Under the pieces are notes generated by a model, which searched no databases, had not been told where the DNA came from, and saw only the letters and a program-made list of their open reading frames with translations. Below, in pieces: positions 1 through 64,000 of a DNA stretch of 64,000 nucleotides (its first letter is position 1; each line of letters starts with the position of its first letter). Position numbers and translations under genes: made by a program. Origin of the DNA: Euprymna scolopes (lineage: Eukaryota); NCBI GenBank assembly GCA_053919585.1, contig CM132825.1, one strand, 5' to 3'.

Positions 1-695
1 ACTTGTACATGTCTCATTCAAATAAATGTATTTTTAAATTTCAAAAATAAATCAATACTTGTACATGTCTCATTCAAAAAAATTATTTTTAAATTTCAAA
101 AGTAAATCAATACTTGTACATGTCTCATTCAAAATAAATGTATTTTTAAATTTCAAAAATAAATCAATACTTGTACATGTCTCATTCAAAAAAATTATTT
201 TTAAATTTCTAAAGTGAATCAATACTTGTACATGTCTCATTCAAAAAAATTATTTTTAAATTTCAAAAATAAATCAATACTTGTACATGTCTCATTCAAA
301 AAAATTTATTTTTAAATTTCAAAAATAAATCAATACTTGTACATGTCTCATTCAAAATAAATTTATTTTTAAATTTCAAAAATAAATCAATACTTGTACA
401 TGTCTCATTCAAAATAAATGTATTTTTAAATTTCAAAAATAAATCAATACTTGTACATGTCTCATTCAAAAAAAATTTATTTTTAAATTTCAAAAATAAA
501 TCAATACTTGTACATGTCTCATTCAAAAAAATTTATTTTTAAATTTCAAAAATAAATCAATACTTGTACATGTCTCATTCAAAAAAATTTATTTTTAAAT
601 TTCAAAAATAAATCAATACTTGTACATGTCTCATTCAAAAAAAATTATTTTTAAATTTCAAAAATAAATCAATACTTGTACATGTCTCATTCAAA
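1..695. repeat. 57-bp AT-rich satellite array (copy 1, truncated by window edge, ~12 monomers)
   Basis: Head-to-tail ACTTGTACATGTCTCATTCAAAATAAATGTATTTTTAAATTTCAAAAATAAATCAAT; monomers vary by about 1 bp through A/T-tract length. Confidence 0.98.
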
Positions 696-856
696 ATGAT
701 GAAATAATGTTTTTCATTTTTCTACATTATTAGAACAAATTTCCAAATCTTCAGTAAAAAATGAAAGGAATAAAAATAACAAAACCCCATTAACAATTGG
801 GGGTGGAGGTGGGGAGTAAGTTTTGAGTCTTTAATCCATGTTTTAATCTTTTAACC
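696..856. repeat. Linker A, short copy (paralog of 30032-30193)
   Basis: ATGATGAAATAATGTTTTTCATTTTTCTACATT...GAGTCTTTAATCCATGTTTTAATCTT matches 30032 onward with about 7 substitutions, then jumps directly into 38-mers. Confidence 0.95.
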
Positions 857-1712
857 AGAGATGATAAGCTGTTGTGTCCAGTCTACATTCAGCAAGAGAT
901 GATAAGCTGTTGTGTCCAGTCTACATTCAACAAGAGATGATAAGCTGTTGTGTCCAATCTACATTCAGTGAAAGTTGATAAGCTGTTGTGGCCAATCTAC
1001 ATTCCGCAAGAGATAATTAGCTGTTGTGTCCAATCTACATTCAGCAAGAGATGATAAGCTGTTGTGTCCAATCTACATTCAGTGAAAGTTGATAAGCTGT
1101 CGTGTCCAAAATAAAATATCGTGTGCTTGAAAGCCAAATCACAACGTAATATTAGGAAAATAAACAAATATTTTACTTGTTTGAGAAAAAAAAGGCATGT
1201 TTGTAATGAGCTGCACGTTGTATCTGAGCAGTTGTATTTTGAAATGTGTCCAGTCTACATTCAACAAGAGATGATAAGCTGTTGTGTCCAATCTACATTC
1301 AGTGAAAGTTGATAAGCTGTTGTGTCCAATCTACATTCAACAAGAGATGATAAGCTGTTGTGTCCAATCTACATTCAGTGAAAGATGATAAGCTATTGTG
1401 TCCAGTCTACATTCAGTGAAAGTTGATAAGCTGTTGTGTCCAATTTACATTCAGCAAGAGATGAAAGCCAATCACAACGTAATATTAGGAAAATAAACAA
1501 ATATTTTACTTGTTTGAGAAAAAAAAGGTATGTTTGTAATGAGCCGCACGTTGTATCTGAGCAGTTGTATTTTGAAATGTGTCCAGTCTACATTCAGTGA
1601 GAGATAACCTGTTGTGTCTAGTCTACATTCAGCGAGAGTTGATAAACTGCTGTGTCCAGTGATCATCCGCTGAGAGTTGATAAGCAGTTGTGTCTAGTGG
1701 ACAGTGATAGGA
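857..1712. repeat. Short, degenerate 38-bp satellite array (~15 monomers) interrupted twice by spacer B
   Basis: Monomers CAAGAGATGATAAGCTGTTGTGTCCARTCTACATTCAR plus local variants (AGTGAAAGTTGATAAG); divergence increases toward 1712. Confidence 0.95.
1129..1578. repeat. Spacer B direct duplication (1129-1246 and 1463-1578, offset 334 bp)
   Basis: GAAAGCCAA(A)TCACAACGTAATATTAGGAAAATAAAC...GCAGTTGTATTTTGAAAT occurs twice, nearly identical. Confidence 0.95.
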
Positions 1713-1747
1713 GAGGAGAGAGATCTGTCTTGTGTGCCATTTGAGTA

Positions 1748-2551
1748 TCACACAGGTTTGTTGTAATTAATTACATCAAAATGCAATCCATCAAATAGAC
1801 ACAGATTAATATATAGAAAAAAGAAAAAAAATATGATTCCTCCAATGAGGAGCACATCAACATAAACTTGCCATTTTATAGTTGGCAGAAGTTCGTCCTC
1901 AGTTTGTCCTATTCTGTTGAGGAAAGGAATACTCTCATTTTTTGTAAATGTTAAATTAGTTTGGGTTTTAACTGTCCTGGATGGAAGGGCTGTTTGGATT
2001 TCGTGTGTTAATGTGGATTGTGTTTGTCTTCCTATTGTTCTAATTGGTTTGGAATTATTAGGTGAATTGGGATGGGTGGTGGAAGTTAGAAAGAATATTT
2101 GATTTGGAATCAGTTCGTTCTCAGTTGCAATAGCTCCTCTTTGTAATGGCAAATTTGTTGGGGGAAGTTGGGTTTCTTTACGATTTAAAGCACTGAAAAT
2201 GGAATCAATGTTTTCTAATGACAAACTGAGCATCAGTGTTTCATCATCACTCCGACTGGTAGAGCTGATTGAAAGAAGAGGAGCGATATTTTTTACATCA
2301 GTTGGGAAGGGTGAAAGAAGTGCGGGTACATTGACCGTAGTTAGTCGTTCACTTCTGGAGGGCACAGCCTCATCGCTTTCTAAGGGCAATGCTTCCAATG
2401 AAATTCTACGTGTAAATGATTTTACAAGAACAGTCGAAAGCATTTGGGGAAATGTTTGGTATTTTCCCGGTGTCACGACTGACATCATGATTTTCGGGGA
2501 AAGGATAAAGCCATGGTTTAATGAATGATTTGTTGCCGACCCTTGCATCAT
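1748..2551 (-). CDS. Hypothetical Ser/Thr/Pro-rich protein with C-terminal hydrophobic (putative transmembrane) segment; possibly a frameshifted remnant of a longer gene
   Basis: 267-codon ORF in AT-rich non-repetitive DNA; S/T/P-rich middle; VYVDVLLIGGIIFFFFFLYINLCLF near the C-terminus. No family recognised. Confidence 0.5.
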   Translation of the reverse strand: MMQGSATNHSLNHGFILSPKIMMSVVTPGKYQTFPQMLSTVLVKSFTRRISLEALPLESDEAVPSRSERLTTVNVPALLSPFPTDVKNIAPLLSISSTSRSDDETLMLSLSLENIDSIFSALNRKETQLPPTNLPLQRGAIATENELIPNQIFFLTSTTHPNSPNNSKPIRTIGRQTQSTLTHEIQTALPSRTVKTQTNLTFTKNESIPFLNRIGQTEDELLPTIKWQVYVDVLLIGGIIFFFFFLYINLCLFDGLHFDVINYNKPV

Positions 2552-2896
2552 TATTCGAGTTGAAGAAATTTACTTTCTTACTGTCTTTCCAAGGGTAATG
2601 TGATTGAGGACAAAAATAATTTACACACTTAAAATCAAAAGTTTTGATGGCTTGCGAGTTTCGTTTGAAACATGCATCAAAAATGCCAAAGATTTTTTAA
2701 AAAAGTTTATGTTTTTCAATGAAATGTTTTTGATTTCATACAATCAACACCATTTGATCTCATGAAATTGCGATATTATAAAATTGTGGATCTTACGTGT
2801 TTGCTCTGTGCACACTGGACGGATGTCTATAACAAATGGATTCACATAGGGATGAAGTCGTTCACTTAAATAGTGTTGCAAGACACTCTGTAAATT

Positions 2897-2992
2897 TTTA
2901 TGACGTCATAAAGGGATGATTTAATTAATGCATAACGTCTATCATCTTAGTAGATTCATGACACCCGGCAAGTCTTTTATGACGTCATAAAA
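2897..2992. promoter_or_regulatory. Pair of extended CRE/ATF palindromes
   Basis: TTTATGACGTCATAAA (2897-2912) and TTTTATGACGTCATAAAA (2975-2992); TGACGTCA is the canonical CREB/ATF site. They lie ~350-440 bp upstream of the minus-strand ORF; function is inferred. Confidence 0.5.
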
Positions 2993-3070
2993 AGAAATTT
3001 TACAAAGAGATGAAAAAAAGGGGAAATAAATGACATGGGGAGGGTGTTTATATTCTAATAAGATGTCAGT

Positions 3071-3120
3071 TTCTTTTTTTTTTTTTTTTTACTCACGTTC
3101 ACCCCTTACAAGGCATATAA
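3071..3120 (-). mobile_element. Isolated 3' tail of a CR1-group LINE
   Basis: Reverse complement reads GCCTTGTAAGGGGTGAACGTGAGT-polyA, resembling tails GCCTTGTTTGGGGTGAAAATGT-polyA (15614-15660, minus) and GCCTTGATAAGTGGTGA (4937-4953). Confidence 0.55.
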
Positions 3121-3126
3121 CAAATT

Positions 3127-4957
3127 GGCAAATAACAAATAGGATCCTGAACAGAAGTGTGCGTTCTATCCCAACCATTATCAATGGACCAGAGGTCATC
3201 TCGTCAGCGTCAGACAAGGCCAAACTATTTGCAAAGAACTTTGCAGCTAATTCTACCCTATGCGACGAAGGCCATCAACTCCCCATATTTCCTCCTATAA
3301 CACAGAACAAGCTAGGTAACATACAAATATCCGTGCATGAGGTCGCCAAGCTAATAAAGAACCTAGATTCCAGTAAAGCAACTGGCCCTGATGGCATCCC
3401 AATTATAGTGTTAAAAAAGCTTCAACCAGAACTTGCTCCCATACTTACGAAACTATTTAAGCACTGCCTTAAGGAGAAGTGCTTTCCGACTCCCTGGAAG
3501 ACCTCATCAGTTTGCCCTGTATTTAAGAATTCAGGTGATAAGTCATCTCCCTCTCAATACAGACCTATAAGTCTCCTGTGTGTTATGAGTAAGTTGCTGC
3601 AATCCATATTAAATAGAGAAATAGTCAACCACCTCAGCAGGAATAATCTTCTTAGTGACACACAATATGGTTTCCGCTCTGCAAGATCTACCGCAGATGT
3701 GCTGACGGTTATATCCCACAGGATTAGTGAATCTCTTGACAAAGGCTTCCTTTCTAGGGCAATTGCTCTCGACATATCAAAGGCCTTCGACAAGGTATGG
3801 CATAAGGGTCTACTTCACAAGATTTCCAGCTACAGTATAATTGGAAATGTTTTCTCAATCATTAAATCATTTCTCTCCGATAGGCTCATAAGAGTAGTGG
3901 TAGATGGACAAAAATCGGAGCCCTGCAATATAAATGCTGGAGTCCCTCAGAGGTCAATCCTGGGCCCAACTCTCTTCCTGATCTACATCAATGACCTCCC
4001 TAAACACATACTTAAATCATTTGTTGACATCTATGCTGATGACACGACCATCTACGGCAACACATCAAAGGCTGTAAATGACAAAGCTCTCTCTGATTCT
4101 CTCTCCTCTGATCTCGAGCGCGTGGTTCAGTGGGGGAAGATATGGCTGGTTACCTTTAATGCATCCAAAACCAAACTCCTATCCTTACATCATCAACACT
4201 CTGATCCCCATCTGGCATCAATTGTGATGGATGGCTCTTGTCTGGGTGAGGCCCCGTGTTTTGACAAGCTTCTGGGTTTGACCTTTACTCCTGATCTGAT
4301 ATGGAACACGTACATCAAGTCTGTTGCCAAGGTCGCTGGAAAGATGGTGGGATCCTTCCACCGCTCCAGAAGATATCTCACTACGGATGCAATTCTCTAT
4401 CTATATAAAAGCCAAGTACGTCCAAGGATGGAATACTGTTGCCATATCTGGGCAGGAGCTGCTAAAAACAGCCTATCCTGCCTTGACAGAATACAAAATA
4501 GACTTCGTGGCTTAGTGGGGGATGCCCTTTTCTCTACCCTGCAACCTCTCTCCCACAGAAGAGACGTTGCGAGCCTGTCCTTGTTTTATCGTTATTTCCA
4601 TGGCAGATGCTCGTCTGAACTCCAATCTCTGGTCCCCCCTCGCCAATCTTTCACGAAAAACACCCGTCTAGCTGAATCCACTGTGAAAAATTTCCCCCAC
4701 TCTATATCTGTGCCTAAATCAAAACGCAGATTCCATTAACAAAGCTTCTTTCTTAGAACTGCACGCCTCTGGAACTCTGTTCCGTCTGCCTGCTTCCCTC
4801 CAGACTACAACTTGGTTGTCTTCAAGTCCAATGTTAACAAATTCCTAATGAACCGCCCCCTTAAGTAAACATATCAGCAAATCTCCTCACTAATGTAATG
4901 TACTTGCAATAACCCTTATCCCTGAGTGGCTTCCGGGCCTTGATAAGTGGTGATCAC

Positions 4958-4988
<31 letters not shown>
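3127..4988 (+). mobile_element. 5'-truncated non-LTR retrotransposon, CR1 group (CR1/Zenon-like), RT domain through polyA
   Basis: ORF 3030-4739 has KATGPDGIP, YRPISLL, QYGFR, ALDISKAFDKVWH, GVPQRSILGP (G>R in PQGS), YADD, MEYCCHIW, LQPLSHRRDVASL. No endonuclease domain. Premature TAA at 4737-4739; the frame resumes to a stop at ~4867; polyA at 4963-4988. Confidence 0.95.
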
Positions 4989-5039
4989 CTACTTGAACGT
5001 AAGGGCTGCTATTTGGGATCATGCCTAGGAAAGATTAAC

Positions 5040-6480
5040 AAGATGTTGGTTTACATTACATTTAAACTTCTGCATAACAGCACAGTCAGGAAAGAAGAAA
5101 AGGTATTCCAAAGTCTAGCTGTTCGAGAGAAGAAACTATTAGAGTAGAAAGCTTTCTGGCATATAGAGACCTCAACAAGGAAGGGTTGTGACTTTGATGC
5201 TAAGCCTATTTTTTGGGGATATGTATGTCAAGGGGGCACAAGTGTAATGAGTTCATCAGAGCACATTCCATTAAAATGCACAAAGATGGAACATTGCGGC
5301 GATGGGACAGGGGTTGGAGCTTAGTTGACAAAGTGGGACCTATTAGATTGAATAAGGAAGAGGAAGAGGCTAGTGGTAAATGCACCAGCCCAGATGTGGT
5401 AACAACACTCCTTGCATGGGTGAATGGTGGCTTTGTAAAGGTAGAGATTACTCTTAGTTGTGATTAGTCTTTTAGCATGATACAGAGAACTCACCTTCTT
5501 TGCAGCAGCCTTTGCAATCTCCTCAATATTGCCCGCGAATGTTAGGCCAAGGAGTTTGAAAGAAGAATTCTCAGATAGGATGTTATTTGTCAGGGTTATC
5601 GATGGTTGGAGAGGCATCTTGTAATTGCTAAAGGAGAGCAACTTAGTCTAACTAGCATTAAATGTTACCATCCTTTTGTGGTCCCATTCCACTACGGTCT
5701 GGAGGTCCTTTTCTAATGATTCTGCCATTGTCTTAGAATTATATGCATCCGTTTTTCACTCATGTATATTATAAAGCGTCGTATCATCAACAAATATACC
5801 CATCTCAGACACAATTTTATCAGGGAGGTCGTTTATGAATATAAGGAAAAATAATGGTTCACAGATCGACCTCTGAGGAACTCCCACATTAATTTTATAT
5901 TATTTGGATGTACGTCCATCAATGACAACCTGGATGGTCCTCATGTCTAAGAAAAATCTTATTATACTTAGTATACATCCACTTATACCGTACAATTTAA
6001 TTTTCATTTGGTCAATCTGAAGTTTAGCAACTGTAAGATGATGAATTAAAGCTTGGTTAATTATGGACGAAAATATTTTGGTGAAAAGCAGGAGGAGGCT
6101 AATGAGGCGATAATTTAATGGGTTAGTTCTTTCACCAGAATTCTTGTAAACTGGTACCACAGAAGCAGTTTTCCAGCAGTAAGGAAAGCAAGATTCGTTA
6201 AGGCATTTGTTGTAAAGGTCGGAGATGACTGGGGCAAACTCAGGAAAGCATTTTTTTAATAGTACAGCTGGGATGAGATCAGGTCCCCATGCTTTTGAAG
6301 TGTCTAGGTTTTTTATGATATCATGCACCTGAGAAGGGGTGATTTTCAGATCGTCTCATGTGATGTCAGTCCGCAAAGGAAAATTAGGGAGGGAGTGGTT
6401 TGTTGGGTCCAATATAGAGTTTGGAGCAAACCGAACAGTAAGCATGTAATCCTTCTCGGTTGCCGTGCAATCAACTTCCA
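5040..6480 (-). mobile_element. Decayed CR1-group LINE (second subfamily), tail-to-tail with the previous element
   Basis: ORF pieces 5900-6328 (KAWGPDLIP, NYRLISLL) and 5321-5641 (KLLGLTF, ECCYHIWAGA), with an internal deletion, stops and frameshifts. Confidence 0.92.
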
Positions 6481-6503
6481 TCTTAAATGACTGAACCACT
6501 GCT

Positions 6504-7560
6504 GATCGTGACTGCATTGATTTTTTGCCGATCTAATGCCGCCATCTTTATTTTAAAGAATTACTCAACACTCGAGATCGTGACTGCATTGATTCTTTGC
6601 TGATTTGATTTACTACCGCCATCTTTGTTCAACATAATGACTCAACATTTAACAGGTTATGCACCGAGTAATCGACTTTGTTTTGACGAATTGGAATCTA
6701 AATTCAAATTGTGAAGGTGAAATTTCTGGGGTATTTAAGCATACGAAAACTACAAAGTTATTCAATCTCCATCAGAAAATCCTAACAACCCTGAATTTAT
6801 CGAAAAGAACGCAACTGTTTTTTGCAGAACTGATTTAATGTTTAGACAATAGAAGTCTGTCTCTGATTATAAGAGATGCCTTGGATGATGGATGCAAAGC
6901 ATTTAACATATTAAGAGAACATTATTTATCAAAAGGGAAACCGAAAATTATAACTCTATATACAGAACTAACTTCTGTAAAACGTAACGAAGATGAGAAT
7001 ATTACTGATTATGTTATAAGGGCAGAAACAACAGCAAATGCATTAAAACTCTCGGGTGAAATAATAAGCAATAACCTGTTAATCTCAATGACGCTCAAGG
7101 GACTTACACCCGATTATAAACTATTTACAACTATTATAACACAAAAAGACAAACCCATAACTTTCAGTGAATTTAAAGTGGTATTGCACAGTTAGGAAGG
7201 GACGAATCGGATACTTGTAAACAATAATTACTTTAGCAATATCATGAAAGAATATATCAGAAATATGTTGTCCAATAAAATATTGGATAAAACCCCATGT
7301 GAAGCGTTTTGAAGTGTAAAACCCAAATTGAACTGAATGCATATATTTGTTAAAAATTAAAAGCTACACGACTACGTTATGGATTACTGTTACTCGTTGA
7401 AAAGTCCAGCAGAAAGTTATAATGAGGCGATTAATTCAGAAAATCACCAAGAATGGGAAAAAATCTATCAAATCCAAATTAAAAGCTTCATCTGAAAATA
7501 ATACATATGAAATGGTGACAAAACCAAAGGATAATAATATCATTTTTTCTCGCTGGGTTT
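6504..7560 (+). mobile_element. Internally deleted Ty1/Copia LTR retrotransposon remnant
   Basis: LTR-like end ...TAACA followed by GGTTATGCACC (6655-6665; degenerate copia-type GGTTATGGGCCC PBS). Gag ORF 6881-7195 (ILREHYLSKGKPKIITLYTELTS...DYVIRAET). Integrase remnant YIRNMLSNKILDKTPCEAF*SVKPKLN*MHIF (~7250-7350). RT start PAESYNEAINSENHQEW...NNTYEMVTKPKDNNIIFSRWV (~7405-7560). Confidence 0.88.
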
Positions 7561-8775: not shown

Positions 8776-10750
8776 CATTTCAATCCTTGGTCTTTTCATC
8801 CTTCTTATTTTGTGTATCGCCAGTTTACTCACTAGGAGTAGTCACATATGCCATCATCAAAGATTTCTCTCTGAGAACAACTTGTGGTGTTCTCTGGAGT
8901 TTGAGTGACAGCAAATTTCTTCCGATTTCCATCCTCGGTCTTTTCATCCTTCTTGATACCCCTCACTTATTTGGCGTATCACCAGTTTATGGGTACACAA
9001 AAAAAAAAAAGGGAAGCGCAGGGAGAAGGTGTCAGGGTTACACTCATACAGTGTGAGTTTTTATCATTACATGTGATGTTTCTGTGTGTTTTGGATCTGT
9101 AGCAATTTCTGAACGTCCAGTTTGGGCCTGTAACTCATGTGTATTAGTTTCCACATTCAATGGTTTTTTCCTTAATATTTAAGCCGTTTTCGTTATTGTT
9201 ATCCATCGTAGCTTCTAAGCTATTCCTCTGATTCCAATCTCTCCATTCCTTTTTTTCAAAGTTTTAAGGGAAAGTAACACTAATGTTCAACCTCTGTTGC
9301 CTGAAGCACATAAGCCTAACCCATACAAAAGGCTTCACAAGTTAAAAGACTATTTACATTCAGAGGAATGGTTTAGAGGCTTTTTTTTTTTTTAAATTTT
9401 TACTCATGCTGTTTGGAATGTGCCACATGGTCGTAATTTAATCCTCCCAAGTTACGGCACTTGGACCTTCTAGAGGATGAACGGCTATCTTGGTTCTCCT
9501 GGCGTGTACAATTAACTGACACAGTTTAATATAAATAAATTAAATTAAATTAAAACTACTGATCAAAGGGAAAGACCTTTCATAAAATGTTAGGCCAATT
9601 ATCTCCCTTAGTCATCTTTTTATTGATAAAAAAAATGTTTGGTTTATTAGAATTTGGGGGGAATTTTTGACACTCCTAACACAAAACTGCGAATAAAATA
9701 TAAAAAAATTCGTAATTTTTCTTTTTCAAATGGATTTTTTATTTTCTTTATGGAATATACTTTCAAAATAAACTATTAAAGTTTTTTTTTTAAATAATAG
9801 AAATATTATTTGGAATTTTTTAAAAAACAATGTTTACAAAGTGCCTGCGTGCGTTCAGGCAGCCATTTTTTTTTTGTTTACGTAATGAAATCCATTGAAT
9901 TTTACGAGTTAAATATTTTTCAATTTTTATACATTAAAAATCTATCAAAATTTTTCTCTTGGTTCAATTTTTATGATATTTTTAGGGTCAATGTGACATT
10001 TAATGCTCTTTCCAATAAACCGAATATAATATTTTAGACAAACGTTTATGTACCAAAGTTTTATATATTACAAATTGAAGATAAAACATCAATAAATAAA
10101 ATATTCAAATTTAAAAAAAAAAAAGAAGTGTTTTTTGCAAATTTACCTGTAAAATCCAAAGTGTAAAACCTTTTTTTTAAAAACCACATTGATTTTTTTT
10201 TTTTAATTGGAGGCCTCTGTCTTGCTTATATTATCCATTAAGTAATGGACGATGACGACAATTTTTTCTATTTCATTAAATATTTCTTTTTTAGATATTT
10301 AAAAAAAAAAATTCGCTGTATAAAGAAGAATGAAAACATAGTAAATCAAAAATTTATGTATTCTTTTGAGAAAAGAAAAAAATGCAACAAGTGTTTTTTT
10401 TAAAGGCAAAATCATATCAGTAAAATTTGACTATTTTTAAACTATGGGAACACCTATTTCTCCTGGCAAAAGGCTAGACGACTAACGCAAACATGTGGTT
10501 TTTGCTACCTTCTGTCCTTCCGTAAGTAAACAATGACAAACGACGACTTCCAGTTTTTCGCTAAAGATGTAAAAATTGTTGCGTTATGGTGCTTTTTTTC
10601 AAACAGTCGTTTAAAACAAATTTTTATTTTAAAAATAAATTGAATTTAAAATATAAATATGGATAAATTCTGAATAATACAGAATTGAACTAAACATTCA
10701 ATAGTATTTTTTATAGGTAAGTGATTTTTTCGAAATTATACCATATCTAA

Positions 10751-14611: not shown

Positions 14612-14780
14612 AGTCCAATGTGAACAAGTTCTAATTGAATCGTCCCTCTAAGTAATCCAAGTTACAAAATTCCCACTGTTTACTATGCTAAAATCACAAT
14701 GACTAATGTATACCTATTAACCCTTATCCTCGAGTGGCCTCTGGGCCTTGATAAGTGGTGACACCCATGTAAAAAAAAAA
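14612..14780 (+). mobile_element. Very short (~170 bp) third copy of the same LINE family, directly after the previous A-tail
   Basis: AAGTCCAATGTGAACAAGTTC... matches 4824 onward; ends TAACCCTTATCCTCGAGTGGCCTCTGGGCCTTGATAAGTGGTGA...polyA. Confidence 0.9.
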
Positions 14781-52500: not shown

Positions 52501-55500
52501 AACTTGAGATGACAAGCTGTTGTGTCCAATCTACATTCAACAAGAGATGATAAGCTGTTGTGTCCAATCTACATTCAGCAAGAGATGATAAGCTGTTGTG
52601 TCCAATCTACATTCAACAGGATATGATAAGCTGTTGTGTCCTATCTACATTCAACAAGAGATGATAAGCTGTTGTGTCCAATCTACATTCAACAAGAGAT
52701 GATAAGCTGTTGTGTCCAGTAATCATTCAGCAAGAGATGATAAGCTGTTGTGTCCAGTCTACATTCAGCAAGAGATGATAAGCTGTTGTGTCCAGTCTAC
52801 ATTCAGCAAGAGATGATAAGCTGTTGTGTCCAATCTACATTCAACAAGAGATGATAAGCTTTTGTGTCCAATCTACATTCAACAAGAGATGATAAGCTGT
52901 TGTGTCCAATCTACATTCAACAAGAGATGATAAGCTGTTGTGTCCAATCTACATTCAGCAAGAGATGATAAGCTGTTGTGTCCAATCTACATTCAACAAG
53001 AGATGACAAGCTGTTGTGTCCAATCTACATTCAACAAGAGATGATAAGCTGTTGTGTCCAATCTACATTCAGCAAGAGATGATAAGCTGTAGTGTCCAAT
53101 CTACATTCAACAGGGAATGATAAGCTGTTGTGTCCAGTCTACATTCAACAAGAGATGATAAGCTGTTGTGTCCAGTCTACATTCAACAAGAGATGATAAG
53201 CTGTTGTGTCCAGTCTACATTCAACAAGAGATGATAAGCTGTTGTGTCCAATCTACATTCAGCAAGAGATGATAAGCTGTTGTGTCCAATCTACATTCAA
53301 CAAGAGATGATAAGCTGTTGTGTCCAATCTACATTCAACAAGAGATGATAAGCTGTTGTGTCCAGTCTACATTCAGCAAGAGATGATAAGCTGTTGTGTC
53401 CAATCTACATTCAACAAGAGATGATAAGCTGTTGTGTCCAATCTACATTCAACAAGAGATGATAAGCTGTTGTGTCCAATCTACATTCAGCAAGAGATGA
53501 TAAGCTGTTGTGTCCAATCTACATTCAACAAGAGATGATAAGCTGTTGTGTCCAGTCTACATTCAGCAAGAGATGATAAGCTGTTGTGTCCAATCTACAT
53601 TTAACAAGAGATGATAAGCTGTTGTGTCCAATCTACATTCAGCAAGAGATGATAAGCTGTTGTGTCCAATCTACATTCAACAAGAGATGATAAGCTGTTG
53701 TGTCCAATCTACATTCAACAAGAGATGATAAGCTGTTGTGTTCAGTCTACATTCAGCAAGAGATGATAAGCTGTTGTGTCCAGTCTACATTCAGCAAGAG
53801 ATGATAAGCTGTTGTGTCCAGTCTACATTCAGCAAGAGATGATAAGCTGTTGTGTCCAATCTACATTCAGCAAGAGATGATAAGCTGTTGTGTCCAATCT
53901 ACATTCAGCAAGAGATGATAAGCTGTTGTGTCCAATCTACATTCAACAAGAGATGATAAGCTGTTGTGTCCAATCTACATTCAGCAAGAGATGATAAGCT
54001 GTTGTGTCCAATCTACAATCAACAAGAGATGATAAGCTGTTGTGTCCAATCTACATTCAACAAGAGATGATAAGCTGTTGTGTCCAGTCTACATTCAGCA
54101 AGAGATGATAAGCTGTTGTGTCCAGTCTACATTCAGCAAGAGATGATAAGCTGTTGTGTCCAGTCTACATTCAGCAAGAGATGATAAGCTGTTGTGTCCA
54201 ATCTACATTCAACAAGAGATGATAAGCTGTTGTGTCCAGTCTACATTCAGCAAGAGATGATAAGCTGTTGTGTCCAATCTACATTCAACAAGAGATGATA
54301 AGCTGTTGTGTCCAATCTACATTCAACAAGATATGATAAGCTGTTGTGTCCAATCTACATTCAACAAGAGATGATAAGCTGTTGTGTCCAATCTACATTC
54401 AGCAAGAGATGATAAGCTGTTGTGTCCAATCTACATTCAACCTGAGATAGCAAGCTGTTGTGTCCAATCTACATTCAACAAGAGATGATAAGCTGTTGTG
54501 TCCAATCTACATTCAGCAAGAGATGATAAGCTGTTGTGTCCAATCTACATTCAACAGGAGATGATAAGCTGTTGTGTCCAGTCTACATTCAACAAGAGAT
54601 GATAAGCTGTTGTGTCTAGTCTACATTCAACAAGAGATGATAAGCTGTTGTGTCCAGTCTACATTCAACAAGAGATGATAAGCTGTTGTGTCCAGTCTAC
54701 ATTCAGCAAGAGATGATAAGCTGTTGTGTCCAGTCTACATTCAGCAAGAGATGATAAGCTGTTGTGTCCAGTCTACATTCAGCAAGAGATGATAAGCTGT
54801 TGTGTCCAATCTACATTCAACAAGAGATGATAAGCTGTTGTGTCCAATCTACATTCAACAAGAGATGATAAGCTGTTGTGTCCAATCTACATTCAGCAAG
54901 AGATGATAAGCTGTTGTGTCCAATCTACATTCAGCAAGAGATGATAAGCTGTTGTGTCCAATCTACATTCAGCAAGAGATGATAAGCTGTTGTGTCCAAT
55001 CTACATTCAACAAGAGATGATAAGCTGTTGTGTCCAATCTACATTCAACAAGAGATGATAAGCTGTTGTGTCCAATCTACATTCAGCGAGAGATGATAAG
55101 CTGTTGTGTCCAATCTACATTCAACAAGAGATGATAAGCTGTTGTGTCCAATCTACATTCAACAAGAGATGATAAGCTGTTGTGTCCAATCTACATTCAG
55201 CAAGAGATTATAAGCTGTTGTGTCCAATCTACATTCAGCAAGAGATGATAAGCTGTTGTGTCCAATCTACATTCAGCAAGAGATGATAAGCTGTTGTGTC
55301 CAATCTACATTCAACAAGAGATGATAAGCTGTTGTGTCCAATCTACATTCAACAAGAGATGATAAGCTGTTGTGTCCAGTCTACATTCAGCAAGAGATGA
55401 TAAGCTGTTGTGTCCAATCTACATTCAACAAGAGATGATAAGCTGTTGTGTCCAATCTACATTCAACAAGAGATGATAAGCTGTTGTGTCCAATCTACAT

Positions 55501-58500
55501 TCAGCAAGAGATGATAAGCTGTTGTGTCCAATATACATTCAACAAGAGATGATAAGCTGTTGTGTCCAGTCTACATTCAGCAAGAGATGATAAGCTGTTG
55601 TGTCCAATCTACATTTAACAAGAGATGATAAGCTGTTGTGTCCAATCTACATTCAGCAAGAGATGATAAGCTGTTGTGTCCAATCTACATTCAACAAGAG
55701 ATGATAAGCTGTTGTGTCCAATCTACATTCAACAAGAGATGATAAGCTGTTGTGTCCAGTCTACATTCAGCAAGAGATGATAAGCTGTTGTGTCCAGTCT
55801 ACATTCAGCAAGAGATGATAAGCTGTTGTGTCCAGTCTACATTCAGCAAGAGATGATAAGCTGTTGTGTCCAATCTACATTCAGCAAGAGATGATAAGCT
55901 GTTGTGTCCAATCTACATTCAGCAAGAGATGATAAGCTGTTGTGTCCAATCTACATTCAACAAGAGATGATAAGCTGTTGTGTCCAATCTACATTCAGCA
56001 AGAGATGATAAGCTGTTGTGTCCAATCTACATTCAAAAAGAGATGATAAGCTGTTGTGTCCAATCTACATTCAACAAGAGATGATAAGCTGTTGTGTCCA
56101 GTCTACATTCAGCAAGAGATGATAAGCTGTTGTGTCCAGTCTACATTCAGCAAGAGATAATAAGCTGTTGTGTCCAGTCTACATTCAGCAAGAGATTATA
56201 AGCTGTTGTGTCCAATCTACATTCAACAAGAGATGATAAGCTGTTGTGTCCAATCTACATTCAACAAGAGATGATAAGCTGTTGTGTCCAATCTACATTC
56301 AGCAAGAGATGATAAGCTGTTGTGTCCAATCTACATTCAACAAGAGATGATAAGCTGTTGTGTCCAGTCTACATTCAGCAGGAGATGATAAGCTGTTGTG
56401 TCCAATCTACATTCAACAAGAGATGATAAGCTGTTGTGTCCAATCTACATTCAACAAGAGATGATAAGCTGTTGTGTCCAATCTACATTCAACAAGAGAT
56501 GATAAGCTGTTGTGTCCAATCTACATTCAGCAAGAGATGATAAGCTGTTGTGTCCAATCTACATTCAACTTGAGATGACAAGCTGTTGTGTCCAATCTAC
56601 ATTCAACAAGAGATGATAAGCTGTTGTGTCCAATCTACATTCAGCAAGAGATGATAAGCTGTTGTGTCCAATCTACATTCAACAGGAGATGATAAGCTGT
56701 TGTGTCCTATCTACATTCAACAAGAGATGATAAGCTGTTGTGTCCAATCTACATTCAACAAGAGATGATAAGCTGTTGTGTCCAGTCATCATTCAGCAAG
56801 AGATGATAAGCTGTTGTGTCCAGTCTACATTCAGCAAGAGATGATAAGCTGTTGTGTCCAATCTACATTCAACAAGAGATGATAAGCTGTTGTGTCCAAT
56901 CTACATCCCAGCAAGAGATGATAAGCTGTTGTGTCCAATCTACATTCAACAAGAGATGATAAGCTGTTGTGTCCAATCTACATTCAACAAGAGATGAGAG
57001 GCTGTTGTGTCCAATCTACATTCAGCAAGAGATGATAAGCTGTTGTGTCCAGTCTACATTCAACAAGAGATGATAAGCTGTTGTGTCTAATCTACATTCA
57101 GCAAGAGATGATAAGCTGTTGTGTCCAATCTACATTCAACAAGAGATGATAAGCTGTTGTGTCCAATCTACATTCAACAAGAGATGATAAGCTGTTGTGT
57201 CCAATCTACATTCAGCAAGAGATGATAAGCTGTTGTGTCCAATCTACATTCAACAAGAGATGATAAGCTGTTGTGTCCAGTCTACATTCAACAAGAGATG
57301 ATAAGCTGTTGTGTCCAGTCTACATTCAACAAGAGATGATAAGCTGTTGTGTCCAGTCTACATTCAACAAGAGATGATAAGATGTTGTGTCCAGTCTACA
57401 TTCAGCAAGAGATGATAAGCTGTTGTGTGCAGTCTACATTCAGCAAGAGATGATAAGCTGTTGTGTCCAGTCTACATTCAGCAAGAGATGATAAGCTGTT
57501 GTGTCCAGTCTACATTCAGCAGGAGATGATAAGCTGTTGTGTCCAGTCTACATTCAGCAAGAGATGATAAGCTGTTGTGTCCAATCTACATTCAACAAGA
57601 GATGATAAGCTGTTGTGTCCAATCTACATTCAACAAGAGATGATAAGCTGTTGTGTTCAATCTACATTCAACAAGAGATGATAAGCTGTTGTGTCCAATC
57701 TACATTCAGCAAGAGATGATAAGCTGTTGTGTCCAATCTACATTCAGCAAGAGATGATAAGCTGTTGTGTCCAATCTACATTCAGCAAGAGATGAGAAGC
57801 TGTTGTGTCCAATCTACATTCAACAAGAGATGATAAGCTGTTGTGTCCAATCTACATTCAACAAGAGATGATAAGCTGTTGTGTCCAATCTACATTCAGC
57901 AAGAGATGATAAGCTGTTGTGTCCAATCTACATTCAGCAAGAGATGATAAGCTGTTGTGTCCAATCTACATTCAGCAAGAGATGAGAAGCTGTTGTGTCC
58001 AATCTACATTCAACAAGAGATGATAAGCTGTTGTGTGCAATCTACATTCAGCAAGAGATGATAAGCTGTTGTGTCCAATCTACATTCAATAAGAGATGAT
58101 GAGCTGTTGTGTCCTATCTACATTCAACAAGAGATGATAAGCTGTTGTGTCCAATCATCATTCAACAAGAGATGATAAGCTGTTGTGTCCAGTCTACATT
58201 CAGCAAGAGATGATAAGTTGTTGTGTCCAGTCTACATTCAGCAAGAGATGATAAGCTGTTGTGTCCAGTCTACATTCAGCAAGAGATGATAAGCTGTTGT
58301 GTCCAATCTACATTCAACAAGAGATGATAAGGTGTTGTGTCCAATCTACATTCAACAAGAGATGATAAGCTGTTGTGTCCAATCTACATTCAACAAGAGA
58401 TGATAAGTTGTTGTGTCCAGTCTACATTCAGCAAGAGATGATAAGCTTTTGTGTCCAGTCTACATTCAGCAAGAGATGATAAGCTGTTGTGTCCAATCTA

Positions 58501-61500
58501 CATTCAGCAAGAGATGATAAGGTGTTGTGTCCAATCTACATTCAGCAAGAGATGATAAGCTGTTGTGTCCAATCTACATTCAACAAGAGATGATAAGCTG
58601 TTGTGTCCAATCTACATTCAGCAAGAGATGATAAGCTGTTGTGTCCAATCTACATTCAACAAGAGATGATAAGCTGTTGTGTCCAATCTACATTCAACAA
58701 GAGATGATAAGCTGTTGTGTCCAATCTACATTCAACAAGAGATGATAAGCTGTTGTGTCCAGTCTACTTTCAGCAAGAGATGATAAGCTGTTGTGTCCAA
58801 TCTACATTCAGCAAGAGATGATAAGCTGTTGTGTCCAATCTACATTCAACAAGAGATGATAAGCTGTTGTGTCCAATCTCCATTCAGCAAGAGATGATAA
58901 GCTGTTGTGTCCAGTCTACATTCAGCAAGAGATGATAAGCTGTTGTGTCAAGTCTACATTCAGCAAGAGATGATAAGCTGTTGTGTCCAGTCTACATTCA
59001 GCAAGAGATGATAAGCTGTTGTGTCCAGTCTACATTCAGCAAGAGATGATAAGCTGTTGTGTCCAGTCTACATTCAGCAAGAGATGATAAGCTGTTGTGT
59101 CCAGTCTACATTCAGCAAGAGATGATAAGCTGTTGTGTCCAGTCTACATTCAGCAAGACATGATAAGCTTTTGTGTCCAGTCTACATTCAGCAAGAGATG
59201 ATAAGCTGTGGTGTCCAATCTACATTCAACAAGAGATGATAAGCTGTTGTGTCCAGTCTACATTCAACAAGAGATGATAAGCTGTTGTGTCCAATCTACA
59301 TTCAGCAAGAGATGATAAGCTGTTGTGTCCAGTCTACATTCAACAAGAGATGATAAGCTGTTGTGTCCAGTCTACATTCAGCAAGAGATGATAAGCTGTT
59401 GTGTCCAGTCTACATTCAGCAAGAGATGATAAGCTGTTGTGTCCAGTCTACATTCAGCAAGAGATGATAAGCTGTTGTGTCCAATCTACATTCAACAAGA
59501 GATGATAAGCTGTTGTGTCCAATCTACATTCAACAAGAGATGATAAGCTGTTGTGTCCAATCTACATTCAGCAAGAGATGATAAGCTGTTGTGTCCAATC
59601 TACATTCAGCAAGAGATGATAAGCTGTTGTGTCCAATCTACATTCAGCAAGAGATGATAAGCTGTTGTGTCCAGTCTACATTCAGCAAGACATGATAAGC
59701 TGTTGTGTCCAGTCTACATTCAGCAAGAGATGATAAGCTGTGGTGTCCAATCTACATTCAACAAGAGATGATAAGCTGTTGTGTCCAGTCTACATTCAAC
59801 AAGAGATTATAAGCTGTTGTGTCCAATCTACATTCAGCAAGAGATGATAAGCTGTTGTGTCCAGTCTACATTCAACAAGAGATGATAAGCTGTTGTGTCC
59901 AGTCTACATTCAGCAAGAGATGATAAGCTGTTGTGTCCAGTCTACATTCAGCAAGAGATGATAAGCTGTTGTGTCCAGTCTACATTCAGCAAGAGATGAT
60001 AAGCTGTTGTGTCCAATCTACATTCAACAAGAGATGATAAGCTGTTGTGTCCAATCTACATTCAGCAAGAGAGTATAAGCTGTTGTGTCCAATCTACATT
60101 CAGCAAGACATGATAAGCTGTTGTGTCCAATCTACATTCAGCAAGAGATGATAAGCTGTTGTGTCCAATCTACATTCAACAAGAGATGATAAGCTGTTGT
60201 GTCCAATCTACATTCAGCAAGAGATGATAAGCTGTTGTGTCCAATCTACATTCAACAAGAGATGATAAGCTGTTGTGTCCTATCTACATTCAACAAGAGA
60301 TGATAAGCTGTTGTGTCCAATCTACATTCAACAAGAGATGATAAGCTGTTGTGCCCAGTCTACATTCAGCAAGAGATGATAAGCTGTTGTGTCCAGTCTA
60401 CATTCAACAAGAGATGATAAGCTGTTGTGTCCAATCTACATTCAACAAGAGATGATAAGCTGTGGTGTCCAATCTACATTCAGCAAGAGATGATAAGCTG
60501 TTGTGTCCAATCTACATTCAACAAGAGATGATAAGCTGTTGTGTCCAATCTACATTCAACAAGAGATGATAAGCTGTTGTGTCCAATCTACATTCAGCAA
60601 GAGATGATAAGCTGTTGTGTCCAGTCTACATTCAACAAGAGATGATAAGCTGTTGTGTCTAATCTACATTCAGCAAGAGATGATAAGTTGTTGTGTCCAA
60701 TCTACATTCAACAAGAGATGATAAGCTGTTGTGTCCAATCTACATTCAACAAGAGATGATAAGCTGTTGTGTCCAATCTACATTCAGCAAGAGATGATAA
60801 GCTGTTGTGTCCAATCTACATTCAACAAGAGATGATAAGCTGTTGTGTCCAGTCTACATTCAACAAGAGATGATAAGCTGTTGTGTCCAGTCTACATTCA
60901 ACAAGAGATGATAAGCTGTTGTGTCCAGTCTACATTGAACAAAAGATGATAAGCTGTTGTGTCCAGTCTACATTCAGCAAGAGATGATAAGCTGTTGTGT
61001 CCAGTCTACATTCAGCAAGAGATGATAAGCTGTTGTGTCCAGTCTACATTCAGCGAGAGATGATAAGCTGTTGTGTCCAGTCTACATTCAGCAAGAGATG
61101 ATAAGCTGTTGTGTCCAGTCTACATTCAGCAAGAGATGATAAGCTGTTGTGTCCAATCTACATTCAACAAGAGATGATAAGCTGTTGTGTCCAATCTACA
61201 TTCAACAAGAGATGATAAACTGTTGTGTTCAATCTACATTCAGCAAGAGATGATAAGCTGTTGTGTCCAATCTACATTCAACAAGAGATGATAAGCTGTT
61301 GTGTCCAGTCTACATTAAGCAAGAGATGAAAAGCTGTTGTGTCCAATCTAAATTCAACAAGAGATGATAAGCTGTTGTGTCCAATCTACATTCAACAAGA
61401 GATGATAAGCTGTTGTGTCCAATCTACATTCAACAAGAGATGATAAGCTGTTGTGTCCAATCTACATTCAGCAAGAGATGATAAGCTGTTGTGTCCAATC

Positions 61501-64000
61501 TACATTCAACAAGAGATGACAAGCTGTTGTGTCCAATCTACATTCAACAAGGGATGATAAGCTGTTGTGTCCAATCTACATTCAGCAAGAGATGATAAGC
61601 TGTTGTGTCCAATCTACATTCAACAGGAGATGATAAGCTGTTGTGTCCAGTCTACATTAAACAAGAGATGATTAGCTGTTGTGTCCAGTCTACATTCAAC
61701 AAGAGATGATAAGCTGTTGTGTCCAGTCTACATTCAACAAGAGATGATAAGCTATTGTGTCCAGTCTACATTCAGCAAGAGATGATAAGCTGTTGTGTCC
61801 AGTCTACATTCAGCAAGAGATGATAAGCTGTTGTGTCCAGTCTACATTCAGCAAGAGATGATAAGCTGTTGTGTCCAATCTACATTCAACAAGAGATGAT
61901 AAGCTGTTGTGTCCAATCTACATTCAACAAGAGATGATAAGCTGTTGTGTCCAATCTACATTCAGCAAGAGATGATAAGCTGTTGTGTCCAATCTACATT
62001 CAGCAAGAGATGATAAGCTGTTGTGTCCAATCTACATTCAACAAGATATGATAAGCTCTTGTGTCCAATCTACATTCAACAAGAGATGATAAGCTGTTGT
62101 GTCCAATCTACATTCAGCAAGAGATGATAAGCTGTTGTGTCTAATCTACATTCAACAGGAGATGATAAGCTGTTGTGTCCAGTCTACATTCAACAAGAGA
62201 TGATAAGCTGTTGTGTCCAGTCTACATTCAACAAGAGATGATAAGCTGTTGTGTCCAGTCTACATTACACAAGAGATGATAAGCTGTTGTGTCCAGTCTA
62301 CATTCAGCAAGAGATGATAAGCTGTTGTGTCCAGTCTACATTCAGCAAGAGATGATAAGCTGTTGTGTCCAGGCTACATTCAGCAAGAGATGATAAGCTG
62401 TTGTGTCCAATCTACATTCAACAAGAGATGATAAGCTGTTGTGTCCAATCTACATTCAACAAGAGATGATAAGCTGTTGTGTCCAATCTACATTCAGCAA
62501 GAGATGATAAGCTGTTGTGTCCAATCTACATTCAGCAAGAGATGATAAGCTGTTGTGTTCAATCTACATTCAGCAAGAGATGATAAGCTGTTGTGTCCAA
62601 TCTACATTCAACAAGAGATGATAAGCTGTTGTGTCCAATCTACATTCAGCAAGAGATGATAAGCTGTTGTGTCCAATCTACATTCAGCAAGAGATGATAA
62701 GCTGTTGTGTTCAATCTACATTCAGCAAGAGATGATAAGCTGTTGTGTCCAATCTACATTCAACAAGAGATGATAAGCTGTTGTGTCCAATCTACATTCA
62801 GCAAGAGATGATAAGCTGTTGTGTCCAATCTACATTCAACAAGAGATTATAAGCTGTTGTGTCCTATCTACATTCAACAAGAGATGATAAGCTGTTGTGT
62901 CCAATCTACATTCAACAAGAGATGATAAGCTGTTGTGTCCAATCTTCATTCAGCAAGAGATGATAAGCTGTTGTGTCCAATCTACATTCAACAAGAGATG
63001 ATAAGCTGTTGTGTCCAATCTACATTAAACAAGAGATGATAAGCTGTTGTGTCCAATCTACATTCAGCAAGAGATGATAAGCTGTTGTGTCCAATCTACA
63101 TTCAACAAGAGATGATAAGCTGTTGTGTCTAATCTACATTCAGCAAGAGATGATAAGCTGTTGTGTCCAATCTACATTCAACAAGAGATGATAAGCTGTT
63201 GTGTCCAATCTAAATTCAACCAGAGATGATAAGCTGTTGTGTCCAATCTACATTCAGCAAGAGATGATAAGCTGTTGTGTCCAATCTACATTCAACAAGA
63301 GATGATAAGCTGTTGTGTCCAGTCTACATTCAACAAGAGATGATAAGCTGTTGTGTCCAATCTACATTCAACAAGAGATGATAAGCTGTTGTGTCCAATC
63401 TACATTCAGCAAGAGATGATAAGCTGTTGTGTCCAATCTACATTCAACAAGAGATGATAAGCTGTTGTGTCCAGTCTACATTCAGCAAGAGATGATAAGC
63501 TGTTGTGTCCAATCTACATTCAACAAGAGATGATAAGCTGTTGTGTCCAATCTACATTCAACAAGAGATGATAAGCTGTTGTGTCCAATCTACATTCAAC
63601 AAGAGATGATAAGCTGTTGTCTCCAATCTACATTCAGCAAGAGATGATAAGCTGTTGTGTCCAATTTACATTCAACAAGAGATGACAAGCTGTTGTGTCC
63701 AATCTACATTCAACAAGAGATGATAAGCTGTTGTGTCCAATCTACATTCAGCAAGAGATGATAAGCTGTTGTGTCCAATCTACATTCAACAGGAGATCAT
63801 AAGCTGTCGTGTCCAGTCTACATTCAACAAGAGATGATAAGCTGTTTTGTCCAGTCTACATTCAACAAGAGATGATAAGCTGTTGTGTCCAGTCTACATT
63901 CAACAAGAGATGATAAGCTGTTGTGTCCAGTCTACATTCAGCAAGAGATGATAAGCTGTTGTGTCCAGTCTACATTCAGCAAGAGATGATAAGCTGTTGT

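What the first reader, a model, noticed from the sequence alone, without database searches (positions are those of the whole stretch)
1..64000. Duplicated two-satellite cassette: the same unit carries ~15 versus ~850 copies of the 38-mer
Seen: the order [57-mer array]-[linker A]-[38-mer array] occurs at 1-1712 and at 22144-64000+ in the same orientation. The 57-mer/linker junction (CATTCAAAATGATGAAATAATG) is identical in both, 29,336 bp apart, and the linkers differ at ~7 of 160 positions, so they are true paralogs rather than an assembly echo. Copy 1 continues into spacer B, an intronless ORF and CRE palindromes. Inference: this is a multi-copy composite unit (segmental duplication, or an unrecognised large mobile/viral-type element) whose internal minisatellites expand independently, capturing both the seed state and the fully amplified satellite. 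TE-borne tandem repeats seeding satellites is established (e.g. Helitrons/Helentrons), but I see no Rep/Hel, integrase, polB or termini here.
Basis: partly seen in the sequence, partly recalled or inferred. Interest (0 to 1): 0.72.

Follow-up and report, generated by a model that had tools for sequence, protein, structure and literature searches.

The report
Megabase tandem array with nested minisatellites
The "duplicated cassette" is two neighbouring units of a tandem array about 1 Mb long with units of about 20 kb, confined to one chromosome region of a large animal genome. Three small internal repeats change copy number independently, and one has grown to about 45 kb, so this is an ordinary kind of structure and not a new mobile element.

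Summary
The order [57-mer array]-[linker A]-[38-mer array] stands at 1-1698 and at 22144-64000+, with an identical junction 29,336 bp apart.

It is not a two-copy duplication or a mobile element.
- At least 38 head-to-tail units, all on the + strand, fill C43:54.21-55.25 Mb. Most units are 19-24 kb, six are 43-59 kb and one is 72 kb.
- The same LINE and copia fragments sit in every unit. The first unit is partial and abuts unique DNA.
- Outside the array there are only two inverted units 2.5 Mb away and one 80-85% paralogue on C33.

Three minisatellites are confined to this locus and vary between units.
- The 57-mer has 1 to 139 copies.
- The 47-mer has 7 to 50 copies.
- The 38-mer segment is 0.4-1.4 kb in every measured unit except the window's second, where it is about 45 kb.

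"Spacer B" is a dispersed small repeat with about 6,900 genomic matches, inserted into the 38-mers.

The 267-aa ORF is open in 36 units. It evolves neutrally and has no relatives anywhere.

Verdict: a macrosatellite-like segmental array with nested VNTRs. Read support could not be tested. The scan noted other gene macrosatellites in this genome, but not this one.

The parts
1..696 (+). 57-mer minisatellite of the window's first unit. It continues left of the window and is 2,719 bp in all.
   Evidence: TRF; length from pre57 end C43:54371978 to linker start 54374698
697..856 (+). Linker A, short form (160 bp), the derived form carried by most units
   Evidence: junction motif at 688
857..1698 (+). 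38-mer minisatellite segment (about 19 monomers, degenerate at its 3' edge), organised as a 334-bp higher-order repeat
   Evidence: TRF (periods 38 and 334)
1109..1246 (.). 'Spacer B': one copy of a small dispersed repeat inserted into a 38-mer and flanked by a duplicated TGTGTCCA. A second, 5'-truncated copy lies at 1462-1579.
   Evidence: its 40-nt core has 6,871 genomic matches on both strands against 0 in the controls; flanks read; copies listed
1748..2551 (-). ORF267: orphan open frame, S/T/P-rich with one C-terminal hydrophobic helix. The 38-mers lie just 3' of its stop codon.
   Evidence: open in 36 units; neutral; no family, no relatives
2409..2693 (-). Upstream Cys-containing frame that overlaps the start of ORF267 in another frame. 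In the unit after the giant array it is fused with ORF267 into a 329-aa frame.
2552..3124 (.). Unit-specific region 5' of ORF267 with two TGACGTCA palindromes at 2901-2908 and 2980-2987
   Evidence: 2 found, about 0.2 expected in 22 kb
3125..4989 (+). LINE fragment (reverse transcriptase ORF 3030-4739) present at the same place in every unit
   Evidence: Pfam RVT_1 E=2e-33; 99% identical between units but only 80-82% to other LINE copies
5321..7355 (.). Further passenger retroelement debris: an unidentified minus-strand ORF with no significant Pfam match and a copia-type gag piece (6881-7195)
   Evidence: shared between units
10739..11083 (+). Third nested minisatellite (47-mer): 7.4 copies here and 9-50 in other units
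   Evidence: locus-specific with 320 genomic matches
13643..16770 (.). Unit tail of type T1, with LINE pieces. 15617-16770 is a LINE fragment private to this unit.
16771..16986 (.). Assembly gap or mask (N), left unfilled
   Evidence: homology with paralogous units resumes at 16987
20180..20591 (.). Assembly gap or mask (N), left unfilled. Both flanks are collinear with two paralogous units.
21600..22143 (+). Unique sequence before the 57-mers ('pre57'), subtype B. It is 99% identical to three other units and 92% to the common subtype A.
22144..30033 (+). 57-mer minisatellite of the second unit, 139 copies
30034..30572 (+). Linker A, long form (160 + 380 bp). It is probably ancestral, because the C33 paralogue matches positions 1-482.
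30573..64000 (+). Giant 38-mer array: 856 monomers in the window, continuing for about 11.8 kb beyond it. It was built by 2.9-4.1 kb block duplications. Two extra copies of the linker's 3' part lie at 33483-33896 and 37111-37524.
   Evidence: its end is inferred from the ORF marker at C43:54449812

Best explanation
The window covers parts of two neighbouring units of a locus-specific tandem array. It can be called a macrosatellite or a tandem segmental-duplication array. It spans at least C43:54,211,138-55,252,037, about 1.04 Mb, and holds at least 38 units in one orientation.

Shown:
- An older single-copy locus had the order pre57 - one 57-mer - long linker - 38-mer region - ORF. That order survives in a paralogue on C33 that is 80-85% identical.
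- The locus had already picked up LINE and copia fragments before it was amplified head to tail.
- Amplification happened at several scales, both single units and multi-unit blocks.

Inferred: the mechanism was unequal crossing-over or replication-based tandem duplication.

Three minisatellites inside the units (57, 38 and 47 bp) gain and lose copies independently, presumably by slippage and unequal sister-chromatid exchange. The single-copy 57-mer is flanked by the short direct repeat TCAAAA, which is the classical seed for such expansion. In one unit the 38-mer ran away to about 45 kb by repeated duplication of 3-4 kb blocks.

The ORF is most likely a passenger. It is a young orphan gene or pseudogene under no detectable constraint.
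For: Copy map. Linker A, the ORF region and pre57 each recur about 40 times on the + strand between 54.22 and 55.25 Mb, in the same order. Combined, they give the unit table.

Whole-unit homology. In the 264 kb I could read, whole units are 95-99.5% identical, including the LINE and copia pieces. Units differ at 0.2-1.1% of sites over 4.1 kb.

Left edge. There is a sharp change from unique DNA to unit coordinate about 10,090.

Multi-unit blocks. Runs of units with the same linker form and repeat lengths recur, for example from 54673093 and from 54987313.

Minisatellite variation.
- 57-mer: 63 bp to 7.9 kb.
- 38-mer segment: 0.39-1.39 kb in 33 measured units and 45.2 kb in one.
- 47-mer: 7-50 copies.

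Locus specificity. Genome-wide matches number 1,378 for the 38-mer, 1,344 for the 57-mer and 320 for the 47-mer, with no control hits. Every listed place lies in these C43 regions, and the window plus the left 200 kb already account for their share.

Block growth of the giant array. The monomer-variant string repeats at lags of 77-107 monomers. Stretches of 2-3 kb are 99.8-100% identical at offsets of 3628, 2926 and 4066 bp, against about 95% background.

The ORF.
- It is open in 36 units.
- Among 8 copies there are 13 nonsynonymous and 4 synonymous variable codons, against a neutral expectation of 13:4.
- It is no less variable than its flanks, 2.2% against 1.6%.
- It has no Pfam family, no word-search hit, no Atlas hit and no phmmer hit in 1.84 billion proteins.
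- Older copies are full of stops.
Against: The unit count and the 45-kb length therefore rest on the assembly alone, and a 45-kb array of 38-mers is longer than a typical accurate long read.

The rest is a coordinate map from searches that score at most 40 candidates each.

The extra 25-35 kb in six long units is uncharacterised, and the right edge was not seen.

A 273-codon open frame is very unlikely by chance in this AT-rich DNA (about 0.002 per unit), and it is kept open even in rearranged variants of 268-329 aa. A functional gene array is therefore not excluded.
Confidence: 0.8

Rival explanations
1. The array is a functional ampliconic gene family. ORF267, or its 329-aa form, is an expressed lineage-specific membrane protein driven by the CRE-bearing upstream region, and the unit was amplified and kept for dosage. 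This would resemble testis-expressed amplicons on sex chromosomes.
For: - Open frames of 268-329 aa stand in 36 units, including rearranged variants.
- The frame is far longer than chance allows.
- Two perfect TGACGTCA palindromes lie 350-430 bp upstream where about 0.2 are expected.
- Weak open-frame matches to its N-terminal part occur on C36.
Against: - dN/dS is about 1, and a value of 0.3 or lower is rejected at p of about 0.025 by my binomial estimate on the counts.
- The ORF is not more conserved than flanking DNA.
- Most units carry the frame split from its upstream part.
- No homologue exists in any searched proteome, and the Atlas recognition score is low.
- Older paralogues are pseudogenes.
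- Expression could not be tested.
Confidence: 0.12
2. The cassette belongs to a large mobile or virus-like element (Helitron/Helentron-type or another giant transposon) that carries its own tandem repeats and has inserted many times.
For: The unit also exists at two other places, inverted at C43:51.77-51.80 Mb and on C33.
Against: - The copies abut head to tail with continuous homology and no discrete termini.
- The first unit is truncated at an arbitrary internal point.
- The only coding remnants are LINE RT and copia gag, which are shared passengers.
- There are no dispersed copies in 5.9 Gb.
- The C33 copy is old (80-85% identity) and degenerate.
Confidence: 0.03
3. Much of the structure is an assembly artefact. 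A shorter array, or the two haplotypes, were expanded or mis-joined, and the 45-kb 38-mer block is an over-extension.
For: - There are N runs inside a unit.
- The array is longer than accurate long reads.
- Blocks inside the 38-mer array that are 99.8-100% identical are what a looped assembly graph could also produce.
- No read check was possible.
Against: - The units are not clones of each other. They differ by 8-45 substitutions per 4.1 kb with tree-like sharing.
- They carry three linker forms, two pre57 subtypes 8% apart, private insertions, and very different minisatellite lengths.
- The monomer-variant pattern along the big array is mostly non-repeating.
Confidence: 0.05

Closest known systems
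Macrosatellites whose units hold an ORF and transposon debris (human TAF11-like, RS447/USP17, D4Z4/DUX4; review PMC5687341)
   Same: Multi-kb units lie head to tail at one or a few loci with about 99% identity between units. Each unit carries an ORF and fragments of LTR, DNA or SINE elements as passengers.
   Different: - The units here are 19-24 kb (up to 72 kb), against 1.4-4.7 kb for the arrays read in that review.
- Unit length is very uneven.
- The array is at least 1 Mb long and lies in an invertebrate genome.
- The ORF is an orphan showing no constraint.
Mouse Dxz4 macrosatellite with an internal VNTR (PMC3491370) and the RNU2 macrosatellite with an embedded CT microsatellite (PMC5687341)
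   Same: A smaller tandem repeat is nested in each monomer of a large tandem repeat, and its copy number explains the differences in monomer size.
   Different: Dxz4 has one roughly 900-bp repeat at 1-3 copies in about 7 monomers. Here three minisatellites range over 1-139, 7-50 and about 10 to about 1,190 copies in at least 38 monomers.
Ampliconic gene arrays such as the human TSPY/DYZ5 20-kb array and the chicken Z amplicon; rDNA with variable intergenic sub-repeats (from general knowledge, not checked here)
   Same: Units of about 20 kb or more repeated tens of times, homogenised by unequal exchange and gene conversion, with internal sub-repeats that vary between units.
   Different: Those arrays hold conserved, expressed genes. 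Here neither expression nor constraint is shown, and whether C43 is a sex chromosome is unknown.
Helitron/Helentron-borne tandem repeats that seed satellites in molluscs
   Same: Short tandem repeats sit inside a larger repeated unit, in both low-copy and expanded states.
   Different: There is no Rep/Hel gene, no termini and no dispersed insertions. The copies are contiguous tandem duplicates, and the repeats are confined to one locus.

Membership tests
Macrosatellite / tandem segmental-duplication array | Units of several kb or more arranged head to tail in one orientation | tested here: met
   At least 38 units on the + strand, mostly with periods of 18.7-24.2 kb. Homology is continuous across whole units.
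Macrosatellite / tandem segmental-duplication array | High sequence identity between units (homogenisation or recent origin) | tested here: met
   0.2-1.1% substitutions over 4.1 kb among 8 units. Unit subtypes differ by up to 8% in pre57.
Macrosatellite / tandem segmental-duplication array | Confined to one or a few chromosomal loci | tested here: met
   Every match lies at C43:54.21-55.25 Mb, apart from two inverted units at 51.77-51.80 Mb and one old paralogue on C33.
Macrosatellite / tandem segmental-duplication array | Copy-number polymorphism between individuals | not testable with these tools
Helitron/Helentron-type or other large mobile element carrying tandem repeats | Element-encoded Rep/helicase, integrase or polymerase (in autonomous copies) | tested here: not met
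   The ORFs of 100 aa or more in the window's unit, and of 90 aa or more in the alternative unit tail, are LINE RT, copia gag, the orphan ORF, or nothing recognisable. The ORFs were judged by eye against the window's RT, not scanned. The long units were not read.
Helitron/Helentron-type or other large mobile element carrying tandem repeats | Discrete termini and independent insertions at unrelated sites | tested here: not met
   The units abut without termini, the array starts at an arbitrary internal point of a unit, and no dispersed copies exist.
Satellite DNA family (genome-wide or pericentromeric) | Long arrays of the monomer at many loci or chromosomes | tested here: not met
   The 38-mer has 1,378 matches and the 57-mer 1,344 matches in 5.9 Gb. 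All listed places are at this locus, and the window plus the left 200 kb account for their share.
Protein-coding gene family (ORF267) | Purifying selection and/or homologues in other proteomes | tested here: not met
   13 nonsynonymous against 4 synonymous variable codons equals the neutral expectation. There are no hits in Pfam, the word search, the Atlas or phmmer.
Protein-coding gene family (ORF267) | Transcription or translation | not testable with these tools
   No runs could be obtained.

The most novel reading that the evidence does not exclude
The array is a young, lineage-specific ampliconic gene cluster. About 36 open copies of an orphan single-pass membrane protein each sit behind a CRE-containing promoter, with a variable 38-mer array in the 3' region. 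The cluster would be maintained for dosage, possibly on the Z sex chromosome. Chromosome 43 is the Z in two squid assemblies (PMC13122204), but this genome's identity and numbering are unknown. That would make it a cephalopod counterpart of the chicken Z amplicon or human TSPY.
Probability: 0.1. Interest if true: 0.6.

Novelty: new member of a known kind. Interest (0 to 1): 0.33.

Why it matters
The locus is a clean natural series for how minisatellites are born and run away. Near-identical 20-kb contexts hold the same 57-mer as 1, 2, 10 ... 139 copies, and the same 38-mer as about 10-35 copies or about 1,190. The single-copy state is flanked by a 6-bp direct repeat, and the giant state was visibly built from 3-4 kb block duplications.

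It also warns annotators in three ways:
- A 'two-satellite cassette' seen in one window can be a slice of a megabase array.
- A 'spacer' can be a transposon.
- Dozens of intact ORF copies can be neutral passengers.

It does not reveal a new kind of element.

Tried and rejected
Everything right of the window is therefore a coordinate map only.
- Whether C43 is the cephalopod Z chromosome, and which species this is: published Z-linked qPCR primers for Sepia officinalis, Euprymna berryi and Ascarosepion bandense (PMC13122204) gave no match or only chance-level 2-mismatch matches on other contigs. The question stays open.
- Function of the ORF: Pfam on ORF267 and on the upstream frame, the word search, the ESM Atlas and the full phmmer search were all blank.
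- An RNA-gene array such as RNU2 or 5S: Rfam at gathering threshold and ARAGORN found nothing in 1-31000.
- BLAST inside the 38-mer array to date the block duplications: every register gives about 96%, so it was uninformative. I replaced it with fixed-offset identity.
- A regular 126-kb super-repeat: units u1 and u7 are each other's closest relatives, but their neighbours do not correspond. Multi-unit blocks do recur, though not with one fixed period.
- Searches for cephalopod satellite literature found nothing on this repeat.
Full report
**Gaps first.** The window has two N runs, 16771-16986 and 20180-20591. Neither lies in the cassette or in the ORF.
- The sequence after the first gap (16987-20179) and on both sides of the second (to 20179, from 20592) aligns to two paralogous units on the same strand and in the same order. 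The second gap therefore does not join unrelated DNA.
- The left flank of the first gap (15617-16770) is a LINE fragment found only in this unit. Continuity across that gap cannot be shown from paralogues.
- The 'ORFs' across the gaps are runs of X.

TRF finds the 57-mer at 1-696 and 22144-30033 (139 copies), and the 38-mer at 857-1698 and 30573-64000 (879 copies, 94% matches).
- The two linkers (697-856, 30034-30192) are 95.6% identical over 159 bp.
- The junction motif stands at 688 and 30024, which is 29,336 bp apart.
- The GC profile separates a 16-18% GC block (57-mers) from a 37-39% block (38-mers).

**It is not a pair but an array.** The window is C43:54374001-54438000 of a 5.9-Gb assembly. 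Three probes were searched in the whole genome: linker A, the ORF region 1690-3030 and the sequence before the 57-mers (pre57).
- Each recurs about 40 times on the + strand between 54.22 and 55.25 Mb, always in the order pre57 - 57-mers - linker - 38-mers - ORF.
- Merging the coordinates gives at least 38 units. Twenty-nine have periods of 18.7-24.4 kb, six have 43-59 kb, and the window's second unit has 71.6 kb.
- These are lower bounds, because each search scores only 40 candidates.

- In the resulting 264 kb, homology runs through whole units at 95-99.5% identity.
- This includes the LINE with its reverse-transcriptase ORF (3030-4739, Pfam RVT_1) and a copia gag piece.
- Those TE fragments are 99% alike between units but only 80-82% like other LINE copies. 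They were therefore present before the unit was amplified.
- Eight units differ at 8-45 sites in 4.1 kb.

**Edges and other copies.**
- Left of C43:54,211,138 the DNA is unique apart from dispersed LINEs. Unit homology starts there abruptly at unit coordinate about 10,090 (window numbering), so the array begins with a partial unit.
- Elsewhere in 5.9 Gb there are only two inverted units at C43:51.765-51.802 Mb and one paralogue on C33:47.6697-47.6742 Mb.
- The C33 copy is 80-85% identical and keeps the same order. It has about 78 bp (one 57-mer) between pre57 and linker, and it matches positions 1-482 of the long linker.
- The order of parts therefore predates the array, and the long linker is probably ancestral. 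The short form (160 bp) and an intermediate form (339 bp) are deletions that spread with their units.
- The linker form goes with the unit tail that precedes it, and pre57 has two subtypes 8% apart.
- Runs of units with the same linker form and repeat lengths recur, for example those starting at 54673093 and 54987313. Amplification therefore also copied multi-unit blocks.

**Nested minisatellites.**
- The 57-mer tract is 63 bp (exactly one copy) in ten units, 120 bp in three, and 575 bp to 7.9 kb in the rest.
- The single copy is flanked on both sides by TCAAAA. A short direct repeat like this is what slippage needs.
- A third repeat, a 47-mer (10739-11083), has 7 to 50 copies.
- The 38-mer segment is 0.39-1.39 kb in 33 measured units and 45.2 kb in one, from the linker end at 54404572 to the ORF marker at 54449812.
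- Whether spacer B is also there could not be seen. None lies in the 33 kb of the array inside the window.

Genome-wide, with up to 3 mismatches, the 38-mer has 1,378 matches, the 57-mer core 1,344 and the 47-mer core 320. The reversed-pattern controls have none. The window alone holds 845 and 145 of the first two. These are single-locus minisatellites, not satellite families.

**How the giant array grew.** Four monomer variants, made by two A/G sites, account for 673 of the 856 monomers.
- Their order repeats locally at lags of 77, 84 and 107 monomers.
- At fixed offsets of 3628, 2926 and 4066 bp there are 2-3 kb stretches that are 99.8-100% identical, against about 95% elsewhere.
- The first 7 kb consist of three blocks that each begin with the 3' 414 bp of the linker (30159, 33483, 37111).
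- This is the signature of repeated unequal exchange, or re-replication, of 3-4 kb blocks rather than monomer-by-monomer slippage. The mechanism is inferred.

**Spacer B.** Its 40-nt core has 6,871 matches on both strands across all the chromosomes listed. The insert interrupts a 38-mer after TGTGTCCA, and the same eight bases follow it. It is a small dispersed element that landed in the minisatellite. It was then copied as part of a 334-bp higher-order repeat.

**The ORF.** ORF267 (1748-2551, minus strand) ends about 50 bp from the degenerate edge of the 38-mers, so the array lies 3' of it.
- It is open in 30 units as a 273-codon frame and in six variants of 268-329 aa.
- The 329-aa form, in the unit after the giant array, fuses it with the upstream Cys-containing frame 2409-2693.
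- A frame this long is unlikely by chance, about 0.002 per unit.
- Among eight copies there are 13 nonsynonymous and 4 synonymous variable codons, exactly the neutral ratio for 615:186 sites.
- The ORF is as variable as its flanks, 2.2% against 1.6%.
- The C33 copy, and a 1,148-bp tandem repeat derived from the same sequence at C43:28.73 Mb, are full of stops.
- Pfam, the word search, the Atlas and a full phmmer scan of 1.84 billion proteins find nothing.
- Two perfect CRE palindromes lie 350-430 bp upstream.

I read it as a young orphan gene or pseudogene carried as a passenger. A functional gene array keeps about 0.12 probability because expression could not be tested.

**Comparison with known kinds.** The review of macrosatellites (PMC5687341) describes multi-kb tandem units that carry an ORF and TE debris (TAF11-like, RS447, D4Z4) and a microsatellite embedded in the RNU2 unit. 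Mouse Dxz4 has an internal VNTR that explains monomer size differences (PMC3491370). This locus fits that kind, with larger and more uneven units and three nested repeats. It fails the tests for a Helitron-like or other mobile element, and for a genome-wide satellite.
- No snRNA, rRNA or tRNA gene lies in the unit.
- Earlier notes of this scan describe other gene macrosatellites in the same genome and call it squid- or cuttlefish-like. I did not verify the species.
- Z-linked primers of three cephalopods did not match. Whether C43 is the Z chromosome, as chromosome 43 is in two squid assemblies, stays open.

**Limits.** No read evidence was available. Only a quarter of the array was read. The content of the long units and the right edge are unknown. 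The exact length of the 45-kb array depends on the assembly.

Noticed in passing
G000:C43:28733819-28746272 (not fetched): A tandem repeat with a period of 1,148 bp (at least 8 copies) whose units match ORF267 at 52-54% amino-acid identity and carry 7-8 stops each. The ORF-like sequence has therefore itself become a satellite unit elsewhere on the same chromosome.
   Followed up: no
window 1109-1246 and 1462-1579: 'Spacer B' belongs to a dispersed family about 130 bp long with about 6,900 genomic matches on both strands. It is flanked here by an 8-bp duplication. Its class (SINE or MITE) was not determined.
   Followed up: partly
G000:C43:51765672-51801725 (not fetched): Two units of the same repeat in inverted orientation, 2.4 Mb proximal to the array, with their own 57-mer, 38-mer and 47-mer tracts. 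The ORF there carries an internal deletion (positions 439-608 of the probe).
   Followed up: partly
G000:C33:47669656-47674239 (not fetched): An old paralogue of the cassette on another chromosome (80-85% identity) with the same order of parts, about one 57-mer, the long linker form, and a degenerate ORF with 5 stops.
   Followed up: partly
L013:6076-8876 and L015:8318-9005: An unrelated 119-bp tandem repeat (23.6 and 5.8 copies, 94-95% matches) in the unique flank left of the array.
   Followed up: no
G000:C43:54449873-54450817 (not fetched): The unit that carries the giant 38-mer array is also the only one where the upstream Cys-containing frame and ORF267 form one 329-aa open frame. Its ORF region is the most divergent full-length copy (95% amino-acid identity).
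   Followed up: partly
window 10771-11598: The 275-aa 'ORF' listed here is an artefact of the 47-mer minisatellite read in frame. It has no Pfam match.
   Followed up: yes
G000:C36:19275015-19275306, 21518999-21519169, 22347693-22348119: Weak matches (39-44% identity) to the N-terminal part of ORF267. The ORF267-frame matches have no stops, while the upstream-frame matches carry three. They may be distant paralogues of the ancestral gene.
   Followed up: no
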